In this document: positions 39,232 through 48,456 of the stretch, piece after piece
How the letters are laid out: each line of letters starts with the position of its first letter
Position numbering within the stretch: the first letter of the stretch is position 1
Assembly: GCA_937625935.1 (NCBI GenBank)
Contig: OW569352.1
Location: 186,001-250,000, forward strand
Direction: 5' to 3'
Origin: Tetramitus jugosus
Taxonomy: Eukaryota; Protista; Heterolobosea
Length of the DNA: 64,000 bases
Made by a program: the position numbers and the translations under genes
The notes under the pieces: generated by a model
What the model was told of the DNA's origin: nothing
What the model saw: the letters and a program-made list of their open reading frames with translations, nothing else
The model's database searches: none

Positions 39232-41774
39232 ATGGTGAGAGCTGTAGTTCGAATATGCCCGAATGTGAGTTTTCATCCTTCTATTTTGCCCTCATCCACA
39301 CCGAGGTACTTTTATGAGGCAACAGATTTGGAGAACTTTAAGTTGTACGAGAGCAATGTGAGGCACTGTGGGCTGGAGAGCAGAGTGGATATGATATATG
39401 ATCAGAATTGCAGTCAGTATGACTTTTTTGAAAAGGAAGTTTCAAAATATGTTCAAATGGCCGTCAGAGGAACCGATTCTAGTGTTCTTTTGTTGGGATG
39501 CCCTCATGGAGGCAGAAGATATAGTCTAGAAGGAACTTCTGAATACCCTGGATTGTATTTTCGATCCTTAGATATGATCCTATCTTCTATTAGTATGTAT
39601 TGAATGATACCCACTTGGTTCAAATGAAATAGTTCAAGTTGTCTGACCATGTGTCTACTCATATAGATTCTGAATCAAACAAACATCAGTATCGGTTGCG
39701 TTTTTCCTGTTGTACAATCGAGAGGGATGTAATTGTAGATTCTCTGCCTGAAAAAGGGAGTAAGTATCAAATTCGATTGAGAGATGATCCAATTTATGGG
39801 ATAGTTCCTGAAGGGCTAAACTGGAAAGTCGTTCATAATGTTCAAAGCGGGATGCAGATGTTCCGAGAGTCAAGGTAATTCATTTTGAGAAATCAAAAGT
39901 TCCTAAAGGCCACTAACAACAAAATTAGTTTAAGAATGAATCAGAAACGATCTCATCTCATTGTATCATTATCCGTGGAAAATTCCCAAACAGGACAACA
40001 AGGAACTCTGAACTTTGTATCTCTCGGTAGTATTTTCGCAACCCAAATGAATCAACCCTCTTCGGGAGTGAAATCCAAGGATATACTTCAAGTATCCAAG
40101 TGGTTCGAAGTACTAAACTCTTGTTTGTCAGCATTGGAGAGTAGAACTTCAGCTATAGTTCAATTTCATAAGTCCAAATTGTCAATGTTGCTCAGAGATT
40201 ATTTGATAGGCCGAAAAGAAGCTATTGTGTTATGTTGTCTCTCTCCGAACATGGAGAACTATCAAACTGCCAAGGGAATGTTGAACTTATCCCATAGGTT
40301 GAAAAGAAGTTGTCCAGAGATCTTTGGTCATCTCGAAACCAAAGATCTACCCAACAAGGAACTAATTGAGACAGCACATCAGAGATATCACCGAATGAAA
40401 TTTGAGCAAGAGAAGAACAAACAAGTACTAAAGGTCCAGAATAAGTACTTAGAACTTATTCAGAACCCAGTTTTGGTTCCTTCTCAGAATTTTCGGACCC
40501 AAGGCATTCTCTACGATTCAGAAAGACCAGTGTTACATGGAGAGAGTCTTACAGAATCAGAAGATTTTGTGTTCCCTATTCCATTGAATGCCACTCTTAA
40601 GATTCAGGATGATTTTGAAGATGCATTTCAAGTTTATGAAGTGAGAGGTGATAACACATTCACACCAAGACGATCGAAAAGACTCATAGAGCGATCAGAA
40701 CAAAAGAGAGATCTTAAGAATAAGGATGAAACAGACTCCATCGAGGCGATTCGAACAACACCACATAGAGGAATACCAAAAAACAACAAGAAGGATCAAG
40801 TCCAAGCAAAAGACGAGGAAATAGAAAAACTACGGGCAGAAAAGGAAGAACTGCAAAGAAAGATAAAAAGTTTAGAAGAAGAGTCATTAATTAAAGAGAG
40901 GAAGTACATCGATTCTCATGAGAAACAGAGAGTTCACTTTGAGCATTTGATGAAGATACAAGAACAACAAGTTAGACAAAGGTATTCGAAGAAAGAAACA
41001 GCGAGACTATCGATCGAGAAGAAAAACAATAATGATATCCCTCTTACAACTCCTCGCAACTCTGAAGAGAGCAGGTACACTGAAGTGATGGAAGCAGCGA
41101 TAAAGCGAATGAAGTTAGAGATAAACGATCTTGAAATCGAAAATGAAAACTTAAAGAAATCCATCCTAAAGAAAGATGCAGAGTTGTTGAAGAAGAGAAC
41201 TAGTGCTCGGCTGAAAACTATGGGAGACATATCTCTACTACGGAAGTCGTTTGCTGAAGCACAAGAGAACATCGAAAAAATGAAGAACAAACTCAATCAG
41301 ATGAAGAGATGTGAATTAGCCTGGGCCAATGAAAGAAAACTGCTCATTAATACAATAGAAAGGTTAGAGAATAAGGGAGTAAAAGACTCTGCTCCAGTGG
41401 AAGAACTCTCAACGGATAACATCAACCATCTCCTGGATCAACAATATGATACTGAAGATGAAATTATGGATCAAACTTACTGTCCCTCGAGTGAGGAATC
41501 CAGTGAGATGATCTCTGACTTAGACCAAGAGTATAGTGACAATCCTTCAATAAGCAAAAGAGAAGAAGCTGAAAAGTTGAGGAATACTCTCGTTAAGGCT
41601 CTCTCAAGAACTCGGCCAAACAAATCCTTATCTCCCCCACCTTATTCATCTTCTCCAATCGTCTTCGAGACGGGCAGTCCTCCAGTGTTGACCAACGATG
41701 AACCATCTACAACCTCCATATTTATCGAATCTGACCCAGAAGAAGTGGAGTTGTTTGAGATGCCGAGTTATTGA
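39232..41774 (+). CDS. Divergent kinesin-motor-like protein with coiled-coil tail; introns 39593-39666 and 39875-about 39934
   Basis: MVRAVVRICP, LRDDPIYGIVPEGL, MNQKRSHLIV, FHKSKLSMLLRDYLIG, CCLSP trace the kinesin fold; the catalytic motifs are degenerate. Confidence 0.78.
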
Positions 41775-41894
41775 ATGACTTTGCGTCTCAAGAGTTCAAT
41801 CCCAGAGTTGACTTTGGAACTTTTTGCTCTGAACTTTCAGTTTTCTTCCTCGCAGTCAAAAAAAAAAGTCAAACACGATACATCGAAATCAATC

Positions 41895-42644
41895 ATGACA
41901 GCCACTCAGAACAAGAACAACAATAATAATCCATCTTCATCCAACAAACAAAGAGCACCTCGTTCAAACAATAGAAAGAATGATGGTGGACCACTCACAG
42001 GCACCAATCTCTCCAAATCTCTCTCCTATGTGCTGAGACATGGTGCAGTGAAGCAAAAGATTGCCATTCGAAGCGATGGCTTTGTTCTCTTGTCCGATAT
42101 TTTGAATCAACAAAAATTCAAGGGCGTAACGCTAGACATGGTCAAAGAAGTGGTGGCCGCCTGTCAAAAACAACGATTCAAGCTAGAGCAACTGCCTGTT
42201 GATAGCAATGAACAACAATCGAGTAGTGGTGGAGAAGAAAAATTGGAATGGTACATTCGTGCGAACCAAGGTCACTCGTTCTCTGTGCCCGATCTCGAAC
42301 TGAAGCCCATCACCTCTGCAGAACAAGCACCCGTGTGCATTCATGGAACATATCATGCCGCTTGGGCCCACATCAAGAAAACTGGTCTGTCTAAAATGTC
42401 TAGACAACACATTCACTTTGCTACAGGTGTGGCGCACGATGAGACTGTGATCAGTGGAATGCGTAACACGGCTCAAGTGCTCATTCATATGAACGTTGCG
42501 AAACTGATTGCTGATGGAGTTCCATTGCTGCAGAGTGATAACAAGGTGCTGCTCAGTCCTGGTATTGGAGAAACAGGTGCCATTCCAACCGCTTACTTTC
42601 ACAAGGTCATTGACGCTCAAACACAACAAGAATTGCCATTCTAA
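41895..42644 (+). CDS. TPT1: tRNA 2'-phosphotransferase (Tpt1/KptA)
   Basis: LSKSLSYVLRH, KQRF, IRANQGHS, HGT, GLSKMSRQHIH, SGMR, SDNKVLL. Confidence 0.95.
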   Translation: MTATQNKNNNNNPSSSNKQRAPRSNNRKNDGGPLTGTNLSKSLSYVLRHGAVKQKIAIRSDGFVLLSDILNQQKFKGVTLDMVKEVVAACQKQRFKLEQLPVDSNEQQSSSGGEEKLEWYIRANQGHSFSVPDLELKPITSAEQAPVCIHGTYHAAWAHIKKTGLSKMSRQHIHFATGVAHDETVISGMRNTAQVLIHMNVAKLIADGVPLLQSDNKVLLSPGIGETGAIPTAYFHKVIDAQTQQELPF

Positions 42645-42763
42645 TATCCACCAACCTTGAAAACACCAATAAAAAATCGCGACAATTTTTGCGCGCCAAA
42701 ATCAAACTGATCAACACACAAAACGTCAAAAGAAGAAAATTTCAAGTGAACAACAACAAACAT

Positions 42764-44527
42764 ATGACTTGTCACGCATGCAGAAAAGCAAAAAAGGCGT
42801 GTGATGGCAATGAAGATCATCCATGTGCCAGATGTGTCAAAGCAGGACAACCATGCATACCTGTGACACCAAAGAAGAAGAAGTCCGCCAAAACACCATC
42901 ATCGTCCATGATGTCTGGTGGTGGTGGTGTTGGTAGCACCAGTAAGCGCATGATACCTATATCTTCCATCATTGACCACTCATCATCAATGCTATCACCT
43001 TCAATGATGATGATGGATGCACTGTCTCATCAACAATACAATCAACAACACCATCAGCATCAGCAGTATCAACAATCATCACAACAGTATCAGCAGCAGC
43101 AACAACAACATCAGAGACGTTCATCCATGTCTGCTGCGATGATGGACGTTGTTGATGTTGGATATTCAGATGATGAATCATCCAACTACAACATGTCGTA
43201 TGCCAATCAACAACAACATCCCATATTTTCACTATCATCATCATCATCATCATCATCAACAGTAACGACAGCATCAACACAACAACAACAGCATCATGAC
43301 TTTAACAACAACAATAGCAATATCATGGCAATGATGATGAATGATGGATATGATCAAAACAATTTTGGAATGACAGCACTCGCTCCTCCGAGTCTAGGAT
43401 TTGAGTATGATGCGGATGCCATGATGGTATCATCATCGTCATTATCTCATCAGAAATCCCTCTCCACTCAACAATCTCATTCTTTGTCCAACATTTCTGT
43501 ATTGAAACCACAATATCGATTGTCACGTATCGATCACTTGTACCTTGTTCCCATGAGAATCGATTTGGACGATGAAGGAATTCGTGTCATTGATTTCTTC
43601 AGTTGGCATGTTCTTCAATCTGATTGCACTGTGCAACAATTTGCAGAATGGTATTCTAGGGATATGAAACTGCCGAGCAACACGATACCACTTATTGTCA
43701 AATCCATCAATGCACAACTCACACGATTTTGTAACCTGTTCTCTGACACCTACTTTTGTCACACGTTCTTTGATGCGGAGAATGATTTGAGTGTGACGAT
43801 AAAGCTCGATGTTCGGTTACAGGGAACAGTGCTCAAGGATCAGTTTGAGTGGAACATTTTGAATGGCAATGTATCACCAGAGCAATTTGCTCAGCAGTTG
43901 TGTGAAGATATTGCCATTGATTTACACTTTATGCCCATGGTTTCCAATGCGATACGAGAGCAAATTTTTCAATTCATCTTCCAAAAGTATGAACGATACT
44001 TGCAACTGGTTCAAAGAGCGAGGAATCAAGCAAGCAACGATGACACACAAGTCGTAGAAATTAACTTTAATGACGTTGTGCAGAAAGTGCAGGTTGATCA
44101 ACCCCAACCACTGCCACAAACCACCACAACAACAACAAGCTCATCGACTCAACAACAGGAGTCAAAGCAAGAGCAAGAGAAACAAAATCAAGTACAAAAA
44201 GAACAGAAAGAACAAAAGCGAAGAGGAAGGAGAAGAAGCACAAAGAACACGAAAAAGCGAAAGAGGAAAGCAGAAGCAGAATCATCCGATTCTTCTGATT
44301 CTGAAAGGGAGGACAACGAAGAGAAAAGTACTTCCAAGGACAGAGATAACGGTATGGATGATGGAGATGCTCAAGACTATCATGACTACACAGATGACCC
44401 CTTGTTCCGAGATGAGGATGAAGTAGATGAATGGCGACCTAGGATAGAAATTCTTGATGAGGAAGAATTGGAGAGAATTGCAGCCAAAGAGGAAAGAGAG
44501 TCCAGATACAGAAGAAGGAGACTTTAA
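42764..44527 (+). CDS. SNF5: Zn(II)2Cys6 cluster-SNF5/INI1 fusion protein
   Basis: N-terminal CHACRKAKKACDGNEDHPCARCVKAGQPC; SNF5 repeats LVPMRIDLD...DFFSW and IKLDV...LKDQFEWNI...SPEQFAQQLCED...AIREQI; C-terminal WRPRIEIL...ERESRYRRR. Confidence 0.9.
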   Translation: MTCHACRKAKKACDGNEDHPCARCVKAGQPCIPVTPKKKKSAKTPSSSMMSGGGGVGSTSKRMIPISSIIDHSSSMLSPSMMMMDALSHQQYNQQHHQHQQYQQSSQQYQQQQQQHQRRSSMSAAMMDVVDVGYSDDESSNYNMSYANQQQHPIFSLSSSSSSSSTVTTASTQQQQHHDFNNNNSNIMAMMMNDGYDQNNFGMTALAPPSLGFEYDADAMMVSSSSLSHQKSLSTQQSHSLSNISVLKPQYRLSRIDHLYLVPMRIDLDDEGIRVIDFFSWHVLQSDCTVQQFAEWYSRDMKLPSNTIPLIVKSINAQLTRFCNLFSDTYFCHTFFDAENDLSVTIKLDVRLQGTVLKDQFEWNILNGNVSPEQFAQQLCEDIAIDLHFMPMVSNAIREQIFQFIFQKYERYLQLVQRARNQASNDDTQVVEINFNDVVQKVQVDQPQPLPQTTTTTTSSSTQQQESKQEQEKQNQVQKEQKEQKRRGRRRSTKNTKKRKRKAEAESSDSSDSEREDNEEKSTSKDRDNGMDDGDAQDYHDYTDDPLFRDEDEVDEWRPRIEILDEEELERIAAKEERESRYRRRRL

Positions 44528-44604: not shown

Positions 44605-45351
44605 CTACTTGTGATACTCTCTCTCACCAAAGATTGTTGAGCCCACACGCACAAGAGTAGCTCCATATCGAATAGCCAACTCATAATCGGAGCTCATGCC
44701 CATTGATAGATGAAACTGGTTCTGATCCAGTGCCAGCTCTTGACACACTGTGCCCTTCAATGAGACTAATTTTTCAAAATCTGGATTGTAATCCTCGGTG
44801 GACTTTGAATTGGTTAGATCACCAATGGTCATCAATCCACATAGCTCCAAGAATGGACACTGATCAATCACATACTTGCACAGTGCAACGGTTTCCTCTG
44901 GCGGACAACCGCTCTTGCTGTCTTCACCCGATGTGTTCACTTGAACCAGAACTTTAAGTTTGCGAGATTCGAGTTCACTCATGGCTGAATTGAGTGCTTT
45001 GGCAATCTTTTGTCTGTCCACTGTTTGAACCATGTAGAGATTAGGTATTTGACAAATGGATTTGACCTTGTTTGACTGCAAATGACCAATAAAGTGCCAA
45101 TGAATGTCAGATGGCAGTACCTTGCTCTTATCAATCAACTCTTGCACATAATTCTCTCCAAAGTGTCTCTGCTGATTCTGATAGCACTCCATGAGCAAAT
45201 TGGCGGGTTTTGTTTTTCCGACTGCGATCAATGTCGGAGTCAATTGAGTGTGGTTGGGTGGAGTGATGTTGTGAATGTTTGACAGTACTCGACTCAGATT
45301 CTGAGCAATGAGTGATGTTGTTGCTGTGGTGCCAGTCTTGGAAGCAATCAT
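44605..45351 (-). CDS. PLPBP: PLP homeostasis protein (YggS/PROSC)
   Basis: LIAVGKTKP, FGENYVQEL, WHFIGHLQSNK, QVNTSGEDSKSG, LSMGMSSD, RVGSTIFG. Confidence 0.95.
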   Translation of the reverse strand: MIASKTGTTATTSLIAQNLSRVLSNIHNITPPNHTQLTPTLIAVGKTKPANLLMECYQNQQRHFGENYVQELIDKSKVLPSDIHWHFIGHLQSNKVKSICQIPNLYMVQTVDRQKIAKALNSAMSELESRKLKVLVQVNTSGEDSKSGCPPEETVALCKYVIDQCPFLELCGLMTIGDLTNSKSTEDYNPDFEKLVSLKGTVCQELALDQNQFHLSMGMSSDYELAIRYGATLVRVGSTIFGEREYHK

Positions 45352-45468
45352 ATTTCGAGCGAGATCAATTTTTTGTTTTGCAGTGTTGTTTTTGTTTCGT
45401 TGTTGGGCGGCTTTGGAGAATTTTCTTGCATTTTCGCCCTCAGAAACAGGAGAACAAACAAACACAGA

Positions 45469-48456
45469 ATGAAGCGATTTGTGAATCATCATCCACATCA
45501 TCATCATCACCATCATTACTATCACCATCATGTTATTCTACATATCGCATCCTCCTCACAAGCAACAACAGCATCATCATTCATCACCCAAGAGAAACGA
45601 CGACTCTATTCATCTGATTATCATACAAAAAACAACAACAACAACAACAATAATAATCACCCAAATAACTTGAGTACAGTGGATACTAACAAGAGAAGAA
45701 ACAATCATCAACAACAACAACATACGAAACACATGTATCAAAACACAGTCTATGGTCACAGATACCTGTTGAATAAACAGAGAGCAATGGAACAGCAGAA
45801 GCAGCAACAACAACAATTGTACCAACAATCACCAACACGATCATCATCGTCATCATCATCATCGATGTACATTGATGATAACAATTCAAATCATGATGAT
45901 CAACCATGGACAAAAAGTGTTGTTCATACTGGATTGGCCAACATATTTTCAAAAGCAACACCATCACCACCACCAACAGAATCATCTCAAGACTCACCAC
46001 CACCACCACAACTGTCTCAAACAACAACAGCTGCAACAACAACTACGAGTCATTATCGTCCGAGTGCACAACAAGAACAACAACAAAAATCATCCTACAT
46101 GAGATCAAAGCCTGATCTCAATCGAAAATTCACCACTCATGCACAACATGAGAAACAGACAAGAATGATGGATCAAGTGCTAGGCTCTTTTCTGCACAAT
46201 CATATGAAACCATTGCTCTTGACAGCAACCACCCGTTCTGCTAGCTCTACTGCTGCTACTGTTACGACTGCTACTGCTACTGCTGCTGCTCATTCGAAAG
46301 ATGCCACCACAATCATCAATCAGAGCATCAATGACAATGACACTGCCATTGACTCACTTGTTGATCATTTGATCCAATCACAGAAACAACATCAACAATA
46401 CTTGCATGATTCTATGTCTATTCTGAGATTTATTGCACAGTGTGTGAATCGATTGAACAACCATTCAGTAGTAGATCAATCATCATTGGTGTATGAGAGT
46501 GATGAAGATATTGCCATGTTTCTGTCTCTGTCCCATTACAACAACAATGAACAATTGGATGAACAGCAGCACTACTACTATGATCATCACAAGAAGAGAC
46601 AAGATGGACAATTGTCGATCACAAAATCAGCCATCATTGCCCAGCAGTTGAATGAACACTTGAGAGCTCAATTGATTCTTGTTTGTATTCGATTGCATGA
46701 GCGATATGTGATGAACTCTACGTGTTTCACTCAATCATTCTACTTGATTCGATTGTTGGTTCAATTAGGAATGAATTATGTGGCAAGCGATGGTGGAATT
46801 GCTCATTTATTAGCGAGTGAATCTAATCATTCGACAACTGACACACCCCATACTGCTGTGGTGAACAATGTGACACGTGCTCAAAACAATAGGATGATTA
46901 TGAATGATTTCATTGTTCAATGGGTGTCTCAGTTGATTGTCAGTAAAGGCATCACCCATCCCGTTCTCGTAGAAAAAGTAGTGATTGCTCTCGTGCAACA
47001 ATTGATTCAACAAGATCGATATGGAGATGCCTGTGCTCTGATACAGTCCAATTCCAGTACATTTAACATCAAGAACGACAATGTAAACAGTATATACACA
47101 TTGCTGATACAAAGTACCGACAGCAACAACCGGAAACATGTAGAAAGATTAATGGAATTGCTAACACACTTGTACAATCAAATTGTTTCATATGCAACGG
47201 ATGATATGAACCGTGTGGTACCGGAGACGTATACTCGATCGAAACATCGATATTTGAGTGTGTTGAATATGGGACTGAAACACTTGTCAATCACACTTCA
47301 GAGCCCCTCTTCTGCCATTTCGTTGTTCAAGCAGTGGTATCAAGTTCCTACACACAAATACTATGAATCCTTGCTCGATAATGAAAAGAGTTATCTCTTG
47401 TCATCTGAGGGACAAGTGCTATCCGATCGCAACATCTACCTTACTGTTCTGACAGCACTGAGGCACAGTCAAAAAAGTGAAGAGAACTTGCAATTCGTTA
47501 TGGATCGCTTGAACAAAGAACCAACTCTGATTTGGAATCTTGAGCTGTGTTTGCAGTCGATTCGATGTCTTTTGTCATACAAAGACCACCAAGAGGAAGC
47601 CTATCAGATATTTATACGAAGCATGGATCAATTTTCGCCTCAATTGCTTCAATATTCCTCGAAAGAGCAGTTCATATTTACTGCTATTCAATTGTTAAAG
47701 CAATTGTTTGTACAAAATCCAAAGCGGATGGCAGCCAGTGATATTGATGAATTAGAGAGGGTTCTTGCCAAGCTCGGACCCTTCATTGATGCCAGAATTT
47801 TGGGACTTAGTGCTGTTCCTATCACAGCAGACAGTGAAACTTGGTTCTTGCTCGAACTATTAAGATATGTCGATGAACATGTGGCTCGATCTGCGTTTAG
47901 GCCACAGATTCTGGATAGTCTCGTTGCTCACTCAATCATCCAGAGTAGTGACGATGTACAAATCACTCAGAAACTGATTAATCGACTCAGAGAACTGTAT
48001 CCTGATTTTCAGTTGAGCACAAACATTGCCAATACTGTTGTGAGTTCTTCCAGAGTTCTCAACCATTCAGATTCTGCCCTTCTAGTGAAACTATTCAAAC
48101 AGCTAAAGGATAGTTTTAATTTAGCGCCAGATAGGAATGGATATGAATCCATGGTGTTGCAATTTGTCGCCAGTGGGAAGGTAACCGAAGCTGAGAACGT
48201 TGTCTGTTTTCTGGCTTCTCAATCCGATCAAGGCATCAACAGCCAACTTGTTAAACCATTGATGGAATACTATGTGCCAAGGGAAGCAAATTCAAAGAAA
48301 TTTGGCGATCGAGCAAACTACTGGACAAAACTGCACAACATACTGGTCAATATGGAGCACGAACAGGAACGTCTCAAGACAAATGACGAGCCACTAGTCG
48401 AGCTCAACAATGATGAAACAGCTCACCTGACGCTGGAGGCGGACTTTGTGAAATAA
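45469..48456 (+). CDS. Large helical-repeat protein, probably PPR-like and mitochondrial
   Basis: Long ORF from ATG 45469; presequence-like start with RRLYSS; degenerate PPR-like unit LAPDRNGYESMVLQFVASGKVTEAENVV. Confidence 0.55.
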   Translation: MKRFVNHHPHHHHHHHYYHHHVILHIASSSQATTASSFITQEKRRLYSSDYHTKNNNNNNNNNHPNNLSTVDTNKRRNNHQQQQHTKHMYQNTVYGHRYLLNKQRAMEQQKQQQQQLYQQSPTRSSSSSSSSMYIDDNNSNHDDQPWTKSVVHTGLANIFSKATPSPPPTESSQDSPPPPQLSQTTTAATTTTSHYRPSAQQEQQQKSSYMRSKPDLNRKFTTHAQHEKQTRMMDQVLGSFLHNHMKPLLLTATTRSASSTAATVTTATATAAAHSKDATTIINQSINDNDTAIDSLVDHLIQSQKQHQQYLHDSMSILRFIAQCVNRLNNHSVVDQSSLVYESDEDIAMFLSLSHYNNNEQLDEQQHYYYDHHKKRQDGQLSITKSAIIAQQLNEHLRAQLILVCIRLHERYVMNSTCFTQSFYLIRLLVQLGMNYVASDGGIAHLLASESNHSTTDTPHTAVVNNVTRAQNNRMIMNDFIVQWVSQLIVSKGITHPVLVEKVVIALVQQLIQQDRYGDACALIQSNSSTFNIKNDNVNSIYTLLIQSTDSNNRKHVERLMELLTHLYNQIVSYATDDMNRVVPETYTRSKHRYLSVLNMGLKHLSITLQSPSSAISLFKQWYQVPTHKYYESLLDNEKSYLLSSEGQVLSDRNIYLTVLTALRHSQKSEENLQFVMDRLNKEPTLIWNLELCLQSIRCLLSYKDHQEEAYQIFIRSMDQFSPQLLQYSSKEQFIFTAIQLLKQLFVQNPKRMAASDIDELERVLAKLGPFIDARILGLSAVPITADSETWFLLELLRYVDEHVARSAFRPQILDSLVAHSIIQSSDDVQITQKLINRLRELYPDFQLSTNIANTVVSSSRVLNHSDSALLVKLFKQLKDSFNLAPDRNGYESMVLQFVASGKVTEAENVVCFLASQSDQGINSQLVKPLMEYYVPREANSKKFGDRANYWTKLHNILVNMEHEQERLKTNDEPLVELNNDETAHLTLEADFVK

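What the first reader, a model, noticed from the sequence alone, without database searches (positions are those of the whole stretch)
42764..44527. Zn(II)2Cys6 DNA-binding cluster fused to a complete SNF5/INI1 chromatin-remodeller subunit
Seen: one uninterrupted ORF. It begins at a GAL4-type six-Cys cluster (CxxC-x6-C-x8-CxxC-x6-C, about 42770-42860), continues through a Q/S/M-rich linker, both SNF5 repeats (about 43540-43980), and ends in the Arg-rich helix (ERESRYRRR). Known: that helix binds the nucleosome acidic patch in SMARCB1/Snf5/Sfh1. Animal SMARCB1 carries a winged helix at its N-terminus. In yeast RSC the Zn2Cys6 proteins Rsc3/Rsc30 are separate subunits from the SNF5 paralogue Sfh1. 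Inference: this is a Rosetta-stone-like fusion giving a SWI/SNF-type complex built-in sequence specificity in a non-fungal protist. I do not recall this architecture being described.
Basis: partly seen in the sequence, partly recalled or inferred. Interest (0 to 1): 0.82.

Follow-up and report, generated by a model that had tools for sequence, protein, structure and literature searches.

The report
Zinc-cluster DNA reader fused to SNF5
A soil and groundwater amoeboflagellate (a heterolobosean, not a fungus) encodes its only SNF5 chromatin-remodeller core subunit as one protein with a "fungal-type" Zn2Cys6 DNA-binding cluster at the N-terminus, a conserved and apparently undescribed way of giving a SWI/SNF complex its own DNA reader.

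Summary
Window 42764-44527 (+) is one uninterrupted 587-aa ORF. Pfam finds Zn_clus (residues 3-41, 25 bits, cut-off 21) and SNF5 (residues 259-581, 97 bits). The structure model and PDB matches confirm both SNF5 repeats and the Arg-rich C-terminal helix.

The fusion is not an artefact:
- A 99%-identical strain contig has the same gene, with frame-breaking indels only upstream of the ATG.
- A relative with only 54% identity carries the same architecture on an mRNA-like contig (AATAAA signal, poly(A) end).
- The Zn cluster is as constrained as the SNF5 core (dN 0.15 against dS about 1), while the linker has diverged freely (dN 0.84).

It is the only SNF5 hit in the 26 Mb genome, which also encodes one Snf2 ATPase with a SnAC domain, plus SWIRM and SWIB proteins. 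The ATPase's best named relatives are Willaertia, Naegleria and Percolomonas, so the host is a heterolobosean.

Among the 150 best SNF5 relatives out of 1.84 billion representatives, only this two-lineage clade has a Zn2Cys6 cluster. Its sister has an AT-hook-like N-terminus, Acrasis has none, and about 28 others carry a C-terminal GATA-type finger.

Verdict: a real, selected fusion and a new variant of a known theme (SNF5 with an appended nucleic-acid-binding module). DNA binding and targeting are inferred, not shown.

The parts
42764..44527 (+). Complete CDS, 587 aa plus stop: Zn2Cys6-SNF5 fusion protein
   Evidence: Translation without stops. Both Pfam domains are above their cut-offs. The same gene is present in strain contig L004 and the same architecture in relative P0002/L002.
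42770..42856 (+). Zn2Cys6 binuclear cluster, C3-C31 (CxxC-x6-C-x7-CxxC-x6-C); R7 and K10 correspond to Gal4 Arg15 and Lys18
   Evidence: Pfam PF00172 scores 25 bits against a cut-off of 21. PDB sequence matches are to Pho7, Leu3, Put3, Ppr1 and Gal4 DNA-binding domains. 37 of 45 residues are identical to P0002, with dN/dS about 0.14.
42857..42898 (+). Pro/Lys-rich basic tail after the cluster (IPVTPKKKKSAKTP), with no coiled-coil; a possible extra DNA contact or nuclear localisation signal
   Evidence: Conserved in P0002. AF2 predicts no helix here. The role is inferred.
42899..43537 (+). Low-complexity S/Q/M-rich linker (residues 46-258), including a predicted Q-rich helix at residues 85-126 (43016-43141)
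   Evidence: AF2 pLDDT is below 50 except for residues 90-120. dN is 0.84 against P0002, and the linker is much shorter in P0002.
43538..44032 (+). SNF5 core: RPT1 (about residues 259-327) and RPT2 (about residues 340-423), each strand-strand-helix-helix
   Evidence: Pfam SNF5. phmmer matches to SMARCB1, Sfh1 and Snf5 chains. AF2 pLDDT 93-98. The top 27 Foldseek hits are all BAF47, Snf5 or Sfh1.
44216..44269 (+). Basic cluster KRRGRRRSTKNTKKRKRK (residues 485-502) inside a variable spacer; resembles a nuclear localisation signal
   Evidence: Seen directly in the sequence. It is absent from P0002. The function is inferred.
44405..44524 (+). Conserved C-terminal element (residues 548-587): short strand plus the Arg-rich helix ...EERESRYRRRRL
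   Evidence: Aligns to SMARCB1 340-377 and Sfh1 368-404. AF2 predicts a helix at 566-586 with pLDDT 90-97. dN is 0.13 against P0002.
42645..42763 (+). 119-bp intergenic region between the Tpt1 stop and the ATG (putative promoter and short 5' UTR), holding the conserved motif TCGCGACAATTTTTGCGCGCC at 42677-42697
   Evidence: Strain comparison shows frame-breaking indels around a conserved motif block.

Best explanation
This is a real, translated, single-exon gene of a heterolobosean protist. Its product is the only SNF5/SMARCB1-type core subunit of the organism's SWI/SNF-type remodeller.

Proposed arrangement (inferred):
- The C-terminal two thirds act as in every SNF5. RPT1 and RPT2 dock on the SWIRM domains of the Swi3-type scaffold, and the Arg-rich C-terminal helix anchors on the H2A-H2B acidic patch.
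- The N-terminal Zn2Cys6 cluster is held on a flexible, disordered linker of about 210 residues. It is most likely a monomeric DNA-binding module of the CGG-reading type, like Pho7 or AlcR, because no dimerising coiled-coil follows it.
- The cluster would tether or bias the remodeller towards linker or promoter DNA that carries its site.

Functionally this parallels what the separate Rsc3/Rsc30 zinc-cluster subunits do for yeast RSC and what the N-terminal winged helix may do for animal SMARCB1.

The cluster was most parsimoniously gained on the branch leading to this organism and the P0002 organism, drawn from a large resident Zn2Cys6 family.

Shown here: the architecture, its conservation, purifying selection, a single SNF5 copy, and presence of the partner subunits. 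Inferred: zinc and DNA binding, monomeric mode, and the targeting role.
For: Architecture and folds:
- Both domains are above Pfam cut-offs in this protein and in P0002.
- The AF2 model and Foldseek confirm the SNF5 core and C-terminal helix.

The gene is real:
- It appears independently in strain contig L004, where indels stop exactly at the ATG, and in several DNA metagenome runs.
- Relative L002 carries the whole fused ORF on a 1549-nt contig that starts 2 nt before the ATG and ends in AATAAA, then 22 nt, then A13. That looks like an mRNA.

Selection:
- Zn cluster dN 0.154 with dS about 1.07.
- SNF5 core dN 0.23 and C-terminal helix dN 0.13.
- Linker dN 0.84.

DNA-binding features:
- The Gal4 Lys18 and Arg15 equivalents are kept (K10, R7). 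The best solved-structure sequence match is the monomeric Pho7 DNA-binding domain (PMC6265462).

Genome context:
- Only one SNF5 locus.
- One Snf2 ATPase with SnAC and a bromodomain, plus SWIRM and SWIB genes.
- At least 41 Zn_clus loci, the closest only 43-50% identical, so the fusion is old.

Phylogeny:
- The quick tree gives ((window, P0002) 95, P0003) 98, Acrasis) 99.
- P0003 and Acrasis have no Zn cluster in any frame near the gene.
Against: - There is no direct RNA or protein evidence from this organism that links the cluster to SNF5. Metatranscriptome contigs cover the gene only in fragments, and none bridges the low-complexity linker.
- The Zn_clus score is modest: 25 bits, against 26-43 bits for the genome's other clusters. 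Two positions that are basic in Gal4 (K17, K20) are alanine here.
- A single CGG-type half-site gives little specificity.
- A zinc module on SNF5 need not bind DNA. The C4 finger of Chaetomium Sfh1 packs on RPT1/2 and decides subunit choice (PMC13580576).
- Only the best 150 of 1072 SNF5 hits could be inspected, so the architecture could exist in a distant lineage.
Confidence: 0.6

Rival explanations
1. The fusion is real, but the Zn2Cys6 cluster is not a DNA reader. It would be a structural or protein-protein module, for example docking on another subunit or on the RPT core, or an N-terminal element needed mainly for nuclear import together with its basic tail.
For: The C4 (GATA-type) finger of Chaetomium thermophilum Sfh1 packs against RPT1/2 and blocks a partner site rather than reading DNA (PMC13580576). 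The Zn_clus score is low and two usually basic positions are alanine. No dimerisation element follows the cluster.
Against: The cluster sits about 210 disordered residues away from the core. It keeps the Gal4 Lys18 and Arg15 equivalents and the basic flank. Monomeric Zn2Cys6 DNA binders exist (PMC6265462). AF2 did not dock it onto the core.
Confidence: 0.22
2. The main protein isoform lacks the cluster. Transcription or translation would usually start downstream (for example at M49/M50), so the Zn cluster would be a minor or regulated isoform, or an upstream ORF-like remnant.
For: No RNA contig bridges the cluster to the SNF5 part in this organism. In-frame methionines follow at residues 49-50.
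Against: dN/dS of about 0.14 over the first 45 codons across saturated synonymous divergence. The MTC start is conserved. Strain indels stop at the ATG. The relative's mRNA-like contig begins 2 nt before the same ATG. Some RNA-library contigs cover 42749-42855 (table 2).
Confidence: 0.08
3. Assembly chimera or mis-joined gene model: two separate genes, a Zn2Cys6 factor and SNF5, wrongly read as one.
For: None found. The low-complexity linker is the kind of sequence that breaks short-read assemblies.
Against: There is one open frame with no stop. The same structure appears in an independent Logan contig from another run and in a 54%-identical relative from two assemblies. No joints or loose ends support a break inside the gene other than low-complexity cross-matches.
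Confidence: 0.02

Closest known systems
SMARCB1/BAF47/INI1 (animals), Snf5 and Sfh1 (fungi), BSH (plants): the SNF5 core subunit of SWI/SNF-family remodellers
   Same: It has RPT1 and RPT2 repeats, plus the conserved C-terminal strand and Arg-rich helix that binds the nucleosome acidic patch in solved complexes. Pfam, sequence and fold matches agree. The partner subunits are present in the genome.
   Different: The N-terminus is a Zn2Cys6 cluster rather than the animal winged helix or the long Q-rich fungal Snf5 N-terminus. The SNF5 domain is divergent (97 bits against 180-215 bits for other eukaryotes). There is a single paralogue rather than the fungal Snf5/Sfh1 pair.
Rsc3/Rsc30, the Zn2Cys6 subunits of S. 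cerevisiae RSC
   Same: A Zn2Cys6 DNA-binding cluster is physically part of a SWI/SNF-family remodeller. In yeast it reads CGCG at promoters and helps keep nucleosome-free regions (PMC6959994).
   Different: In yeast they are separate, dispensable, heterodimeric subunits with large fungal-type regulatory regions. They bind Rsc9 in the body and tail, not Sfh1 (PMC6959994, PMC13580576). Here the cluster is covalently part of the SNF5 subunit, has no Fungal_trans region and shows no evident dimerisation element. The resemblance is convergent, not homologous.
SNF5 + C-terminal GATA-type C4 zinc finger (many fungal Sfh1-type proteins; also seen here in Galdieria and Allomyces sequences)
   Same: An SNF5 subunit carrying a small zinc module in the same polypeptide. 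About 28 of the 150 best relatives have it, and Pfam confirms it on L005 and L006.
   Different: The zinc fold differs (C4 against binuclear Cys6) and so does the end of the protein (C-terminal against N-terminal). In Chaetomium the finger packs on RPT1/2 as a structural element (PMC13580576). Here the cluster is on a long flexible linker.
Pho7 (S. pombe) and AlcR (Aspergillus): monomeric Zn2Cys6 DNA binders
   Same: The Pho7 DNA-binding domain is the best solved-structure sequence match to residues 2-40. It has a cluster followed by a basic, Pro/Lys-rich tail, without a coiled-coil.
   Different: Those are conventional transcription factors. The residues with which Pho7 reads its 14-bp site were not compared in detail here.

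Membership tests
SNF5/SMARCB1/INI1 (PF04855) | Profile match above the curated cut-off, spanning both repeats | tested here: met
   97.4 bits against a cut-off of 21.8, residues 259-581 on profile positions 6-225.
SNF5/SMARCB1/INI1 (PF04855) | Two tandem RPT repeats with the strand-strand-helix-helix fold | tested here: met
   AF2 predicts E261-270, E273-282, H290-300, H305-327 and E343-352, E355-364, H372-383, H389-423 at pLDDT 93-98. The top Foldseek hits are BAF47, Snf5 and Sfh1.
SNF5/SMARCB1/INI1 (PF04855) | C-terminal Arg-rich helix (the acidic-patch anchor in solved complexes) | tested here: met
   Residues 548-585 align to SMARCB1 340-377 and Sfh1 368-404. AF2 predicts a helix at 566-586 with pLDDT 90-97. 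Actual nucleosome binding was not tested.
SNF5/SMARCB1/INI1 (PF04855) | Assembly with a Snf2-type ATPase and a Swi3/SWIRM scaffold | not testable with these tools
   The partner genes exist: an ATPase with SNF2, Helicase_C, SnAC and bromodomain, SWIRM and SWIB. Physical association needs co-purification.
Zn2Cys6 binuclear cluster (PF00172) | Six cysteines with spacing CX2CX6CX5-12CX2CX6-8C | tested here: met
   C3, C6, C13, C21, C24 and C31, that is CX2CX6CX7CX2CX6C. All six are conserved in P0002.
Zn2Cys6 binuclear cluster (PF00172) | Profile match above the gathering score | tested here: met
   25.0 bits for this protein and 23.3 bits for P0002, against a cut-off of 21. This is marginal compared with the genome's other clusters at 26-43 bits.
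Zn2Cys6 binuclear cluster (PF00172) | Base- and phosphate-contacting basic residues of the first half-cluster (Gal4 Arg15, Lys18) | tested here: met
   R7 and K10 align to Gal4 Arg15 and Lys18 (alignment ranges; PMC6265462 for the role of Lys18). The Gal4 Lys17 and Lys20 positions are alanine here.
Zn2Cys6 binuclear cluster (PF00172) | Binds two zinc ions and DNA | not testable with these tools
   Needs biochemistry.
Classical dimeric Gal4-type factor | Linker plus coiled-coil dimerisation element directly after the cluster | tested here: not met
   Residues 32-84 are Pro/Lys/Ser-rich and predicted non-helical with low pLDDT. A Q-rich helix appears only at residues 85-126, and its significance is uncertain.
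Rsc3/Rsc30-type RSC subunit | Zn cluster followed by the fungal transcription-factor middle homology region; a separate subunit | tested here: not met
   There is no Fungal_trans or Fungal_trans_2 hit, and the cluster is fused to SNF5. It is analogous only.
Animal SMARCB1 architecture | N-terminal winged-helix DNA-binding domain | tested here: not met
   No such Pfam hit. The N-terminus is the Zn cluster.
Fungal Sfh1-type SNF5 + GATA finger | C-terminal CX2CX17-20CX2C finger | tested here: not met
   The regex finds none in P0001 or P0002. The protein ends at the Arg-rich helix.

The most novel reading that the evidence does not exclude
A heterolobosean lineage has hard-wired a sequence-reading Zn2Cys6 module into the single core SNF5 subunit of its only SWI/SNF remodeller. 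The same genome also puts a Zn2Cys6 cluster on a GTF3C2-like TFIIIC WD40 subunit. On this reading, the lineage uses 'fungal' zinc clusters as portable DNA-address tags on general chromatin and transcription machinery. That would be a convergent, covalent version of yeast Rsc3/Rsc30, making every remodeller molecule intrinsically sequence-targeted.
Probability: 0.35. Interest if true: 0.75.

Novelty: new variant of a known kind. Interest (0 to 1): 0.56.

Why it matters
How SWI/SNF remodellers find their sites is a central question. The usual answer is recruitment by separate transcription factors, or by peripheral subunits such as Rsc3/Rsc30 in budding yeast.

A core, single-copy SNF5 subunit that carries its own Zn2Cys6 reader would be a natural experiment in built-in targeting. 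It occurs in a deep-branching eukaryote (Discoba) far from fungi. It would show that the pairing of zinc cluster and remodeller evolved at least twice.

It also documents a large Zn2Cys6 family (at least 41 loci) outside fungi. And it gives a small, testable module: 45 residues whose DNA motif could be determined and then mapped onto promoters of a compact 26 Mb genome.

Tried and rejected
- Word-indexed protein searches with the whole protein and with residues 250-425 found only P0001 and P0002. The SNF5 domain is too divergent for shared 5-mers, so I used the exhaustive profile search instead.
- The ESM Atlas search gave no usable hit.
- Read laying on four RNA or RNA-like runs, using 3201 letters (within the operators' limit), gave only fragmentary contigs. 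There were no joints and no contig bridging the cluster to SNF5. The short matches at 42704-42766, 43078-43114 and about 44120 are low-complexity cross-matches from other organisms. It neither supports nor refutes the fused transcript in this organism.
- Literature searches for SNF5 with Zn2Cys6 and fusion, Zn2Cys6 with Naegleria, and Zn_clus with Naegleria returned nothing relevant. The Acrasis genome paper mentions neither family.
- Synteny: the P0003 and Acrasis orthologues have different neighbours, so context gave no help.
- CGCG-type motif enrichment in intergenic DNA of the window is suggestive (GCGCG/CGCGC 0.65 against 0.10 per kb). It rests on about 9 against 5 sites, and the site upstream of this gene looks more like an E2F-type palindrome. 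I do not use it as evidence for a target motif.
- The careful maximum-likelihood tree did not finish in time, so only the quick tree (SH-aLRT support) is reported.
- No spliced models were needed, because the gene is intronless.
Full report
**1. Observation**

Window 42764-44527 (+) is one open frame of 587 codons.
- Pfam finds the Zn(2)-Cys(6) binuclear cluster at residues 3-41 (25.0 bits, cut-off 21) and SNF5 at residues 259-581 (97.4 bits, cut-off 21.8).
- The six cysteines are C3, C6, C13, C21, C24 and C31 (42770-42856).
- The linker, residues 46-258, is S/Q/M-rich.

**2. Is the gene model right?**

The neighbours are a Tpt1 RNA 2'-phosphotransferase gene ending at 42644 (+) and a PLP-binding (Ala_racemase_N-type) gene at 44605-45531 (-). 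That leaves a 119-bp upstream gap.

A Logan contig from a different run (L004; protein P0001, 99% identical) has the same three genes. When aligned to the window:
- the upstream gap shows indels of 2, 5, 1, 2, 8 and 2 bases;
- from the ATG onward, the 147 aligned coding bases are identical.

So the region upstream of 42764 is non-coding and the ATG is the start.

Several DNA metagenome runs (groundwater, soil, hydrocarbon) hold 57-91% of the locus's words. An assembly chimera is therefore very unlikely.

**3. A second, divergent lineage has the same fusion**

P0002 (452 aa, 54% identical overall) begins with the same cluster sequence as this protein. It passes the Pfam Zn_clus cut-off (23.3 bits) and has SNF5 at 122 bits.
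- Its contig L002 (1549 nt) starts 2 nt before the ATG and ends in AATAAA, then 22 nt, then 13 A's. It has the form of an assembled polyadenylated mRNA covering the whole fused ORF.
- Codon comparison of the window with L002 gives these dN values, with synonymous sites saturated (dS about 1.07, pS 0.57-0.9):
  - Zn cluster and basic tail: 0.154
  - SNF5 repeats: 0.229
  - C-terminal helix: 0.126
  - linker: 0.84
  - spacer: 0.78

The cluster is thus under purifying selection as strong as the SNF5 core.

**4. RNA evidence in this organism is weak**

Contigs from four RNA or RNA-like runs lie on parts of the gene, including bins over the cluster. None bridges the low-complexity linker, and no splice joints were seen. 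This is neither support nor refutation.

**5. The SNF5 part is complete**

- phmmer against the PDB matches human SMARCB1 (6kag, 6ltj, 6lth), yeast Sfh1 (6k15) and Snf5.
- Residues 548-585 align to SMARCB1 340-377 and Sfh1 368-404, the conserved C-terminal element.
- An AlphaFold2 model built with 60 homologues gives pLDDT 93-98 for residues 250-445, with two strand-strand-helix-helix repeats, and 90-97 for the C-terminal helix at 566-586.
- In the same model the cluster has two short helices at pLDDT 63-76. The linker is disordered apart from a Q-rich helix at residues 85-126.
- The top 27 Foldseek hits are all BAF47, Snf5 or Sfh1.

**6. The Zn cluster**

- The best solved-structure sequence matches for residues 1-50 are DNA-binding domains: S. 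pombe Pho7 (6e33, 6o19), then Leu3, Put3, Ppr1 and Gal4.
- With the offset of that alignment, R7 and K10 correspond to Gal4 Arg15 and Lys18. Lys18 is the only Gal4 side chain that contacts the bases of the CGG triplet (PMC6265462).
- No coiled-coil follows the cluster. The next 14 residues are Pro/Lys-rich.
- Pho7 and AlcR show that monomeric Zn2Cys6 DNA binding exists (PMC6265462).
- There is no Fungal_trans region.

**7. Genome context**

- The genome (26.35 Mb, 56 contigs) has exactly one SNF5 match.
- It has one SnAC-bearing Snf2 ATPase, which Pfam resolves as SNF2-related, Helicase_C, SnAC and bromodomain.
- It has two SWIRM loci, SWIB loci and one HSA locus.
- It has at least 41 Zn_clus loci, all in long open frames. 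The closest to this cluster is only 43-50% identical, so this is not a recent exon copy.

**8. Who is the host?**

The Snf2 ATPase's best named relatives are Willaertia magna (59%), Naegleria lovaniensis, N. fowleri and N. gruberi (56-57%) and Percolomonas cosmopolitus (56%). These rank ahead of animals and fungi (about 52%). Two unnamed metagenome proteins are 74-76% identical.

The nearest named SNF5 is KAL0484606.1 on JAOPGA02, which is Acrasis kona (PMC11589745).

The host is therefore a heterolobosean outside Naegleria and Willaertia, found in groundwater, soil and hot-spring samples.

**9. How rare is the architecture?**

An exhaustive profile search of 1.84 billion representatives gave 1072 SNF5-type hits. 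Among the best 150:
- a Zn2Cys6 pattern occurs only in P0001 and P0002;
- about 28 carry a C-terminal GATA-type finger, confirmed by Pfam on L005 and L006.

A quick ML tree gives ((window, P0002) 95, P0003) 98, Acrasis kona) 99.
- P0003, from a 46.7-kb metagenome contig, starts with an AT-hook-like KRGRGRPRK. Only 157 bp separate it from the upstream gene.
- The Acrasis protein starts directly at RPT1.
- Neither locus encodes a Zn2Cys6 pattern in any frame.

The most parsimonious reading is a gain of the cluster on the branch leading to the window organism and P0002.

Literature searches found no description of this fusion. Only 150 of the 1072 hits could be inspected, so a distant independent occurrence is not excluded.

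**10. Comparison with known systems**

- In yeast RSC, Rsc3/Rsc30 are separate, dispensable zinc-cluster subunits. They bind CGCG, sit on Rsc9 and form the tail, whereas Sfh1 lies in the arm lobe (PMC6959994). They have no homologues even in S. pombe or Chaetomium (PMC13580576; see also PMC9170682). The present protein is therefore a convergent analogue, not a fusion of Rsc3-like and Sfh1-like ancestors.
- The animal SMARCB1 N-terminal winged helix is cited in PMC6959994's reference list (Allen et al. 2015).
- The fungal C-terminal C4 finger shows that SNF5 repeatedly acquires small appended modules.
- In Chaetomium Sfh1 that finger is structural: it packs on RPT1/2 and excludes Snf70 (PMC13580576). 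This is the main caution against assuming DNA binding here.

**11. Mechanism proposed (inferred)**

- The SNF5 core assembles with the SWIRM scaffold and anchors the complex on the acidic patch.
- The N-terminal cluster, on its flexible tether of about 210 residues, samples nearby linker or promoter DNA as a monomer. It would add affinity for CGG-type sites, biasing where the single remodeller engages.

My probabilities:
- real, translated fusion: about 0.9;
- DNA-binding and targeting role: about 0.6;
- structural or other role: about 0.2.

**12. Verdict**

This is a new variant of a known kind and is moderately interesting. It is a clean, conserved, lineage-specific architecture in an under-studied eukaryotic group, with a directly testable hypothesis. 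It remains a domain-architecture finding without functional data.

Noticed in passing
L016:1034-3913 (G000:C44:127033-129912, +): A second Zn2Cys6 fusion to general machinery. This 959-aa ORF has Zn_clus at residues 21-50 (31.5 bits) and a C-terminal WD40 propeller. Its longest PDB sequence match is human GTF3C2 (8cli_C, residues 480-745 against 408-680, E 3.5e-7).
   Followed up: partly
G000, whole genome: At least 41 Zn_clus (PF00172) loci above the cut-off in a heterolobosean genome of 26 Mb, nearly all in open frames of 400-1200 aa. This is a large 'fungal-type' family outside fungi.
   Followed up: partly
window 42677-42697: The motif TCGCGACAATTTTTGCGCGCC lies 67-87 bp upstream of the ATG. 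It is conserved between strains while its flanks carry indels. TTTTTGCGCGCCAAAA resembles a palindromic E2F-type site. GCGCG-type words are somewhat enriched in intergenic DNA of the window, though the counts are small.
   Followed up: partly
L013:6001-6930 (protein P0003): The sister-lineage SNF5 (309 aa) has an AT-hook-like motif, KRGRGRPRK, at its N-terminus in place of the Zn cluster. Different small DNA-binding appendages sit on the same subunit in neighbouring lineages.
   Followed up: partly
L005:17-1426, L006:252-1673 and about 28 of the 150 best SNF5 relatives: SNF5 with a C-terminal GATA-type C4 finger is widespread among the relatives. It appears in sequences labelled Galdieria and Allomyces, not only in Dikarya.
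   Followed up: partly
window 41772-41777: The kinesin-like ORF ends at 41774 and the Tpt1 ORF starts at 41775, so stop and ATG are directly adjacent. This fits the very tight gene spacing of this genome. The kinesin ORF matches only the last third of the motor-domain profile.
   Followed up: no
window 43016-43141 (residues 85-126): AF2 predicts a long Q/H/Y-rich helix in the linker (pLDDT up to 88). P0002 has a Q/L/F-rich counterpart. It could be a coiled-coil or activator-contact region like the Q-rich N-terminus of yeast Snf5, or an AF2 artefact on low-complexity sequence.
   Followed up: no
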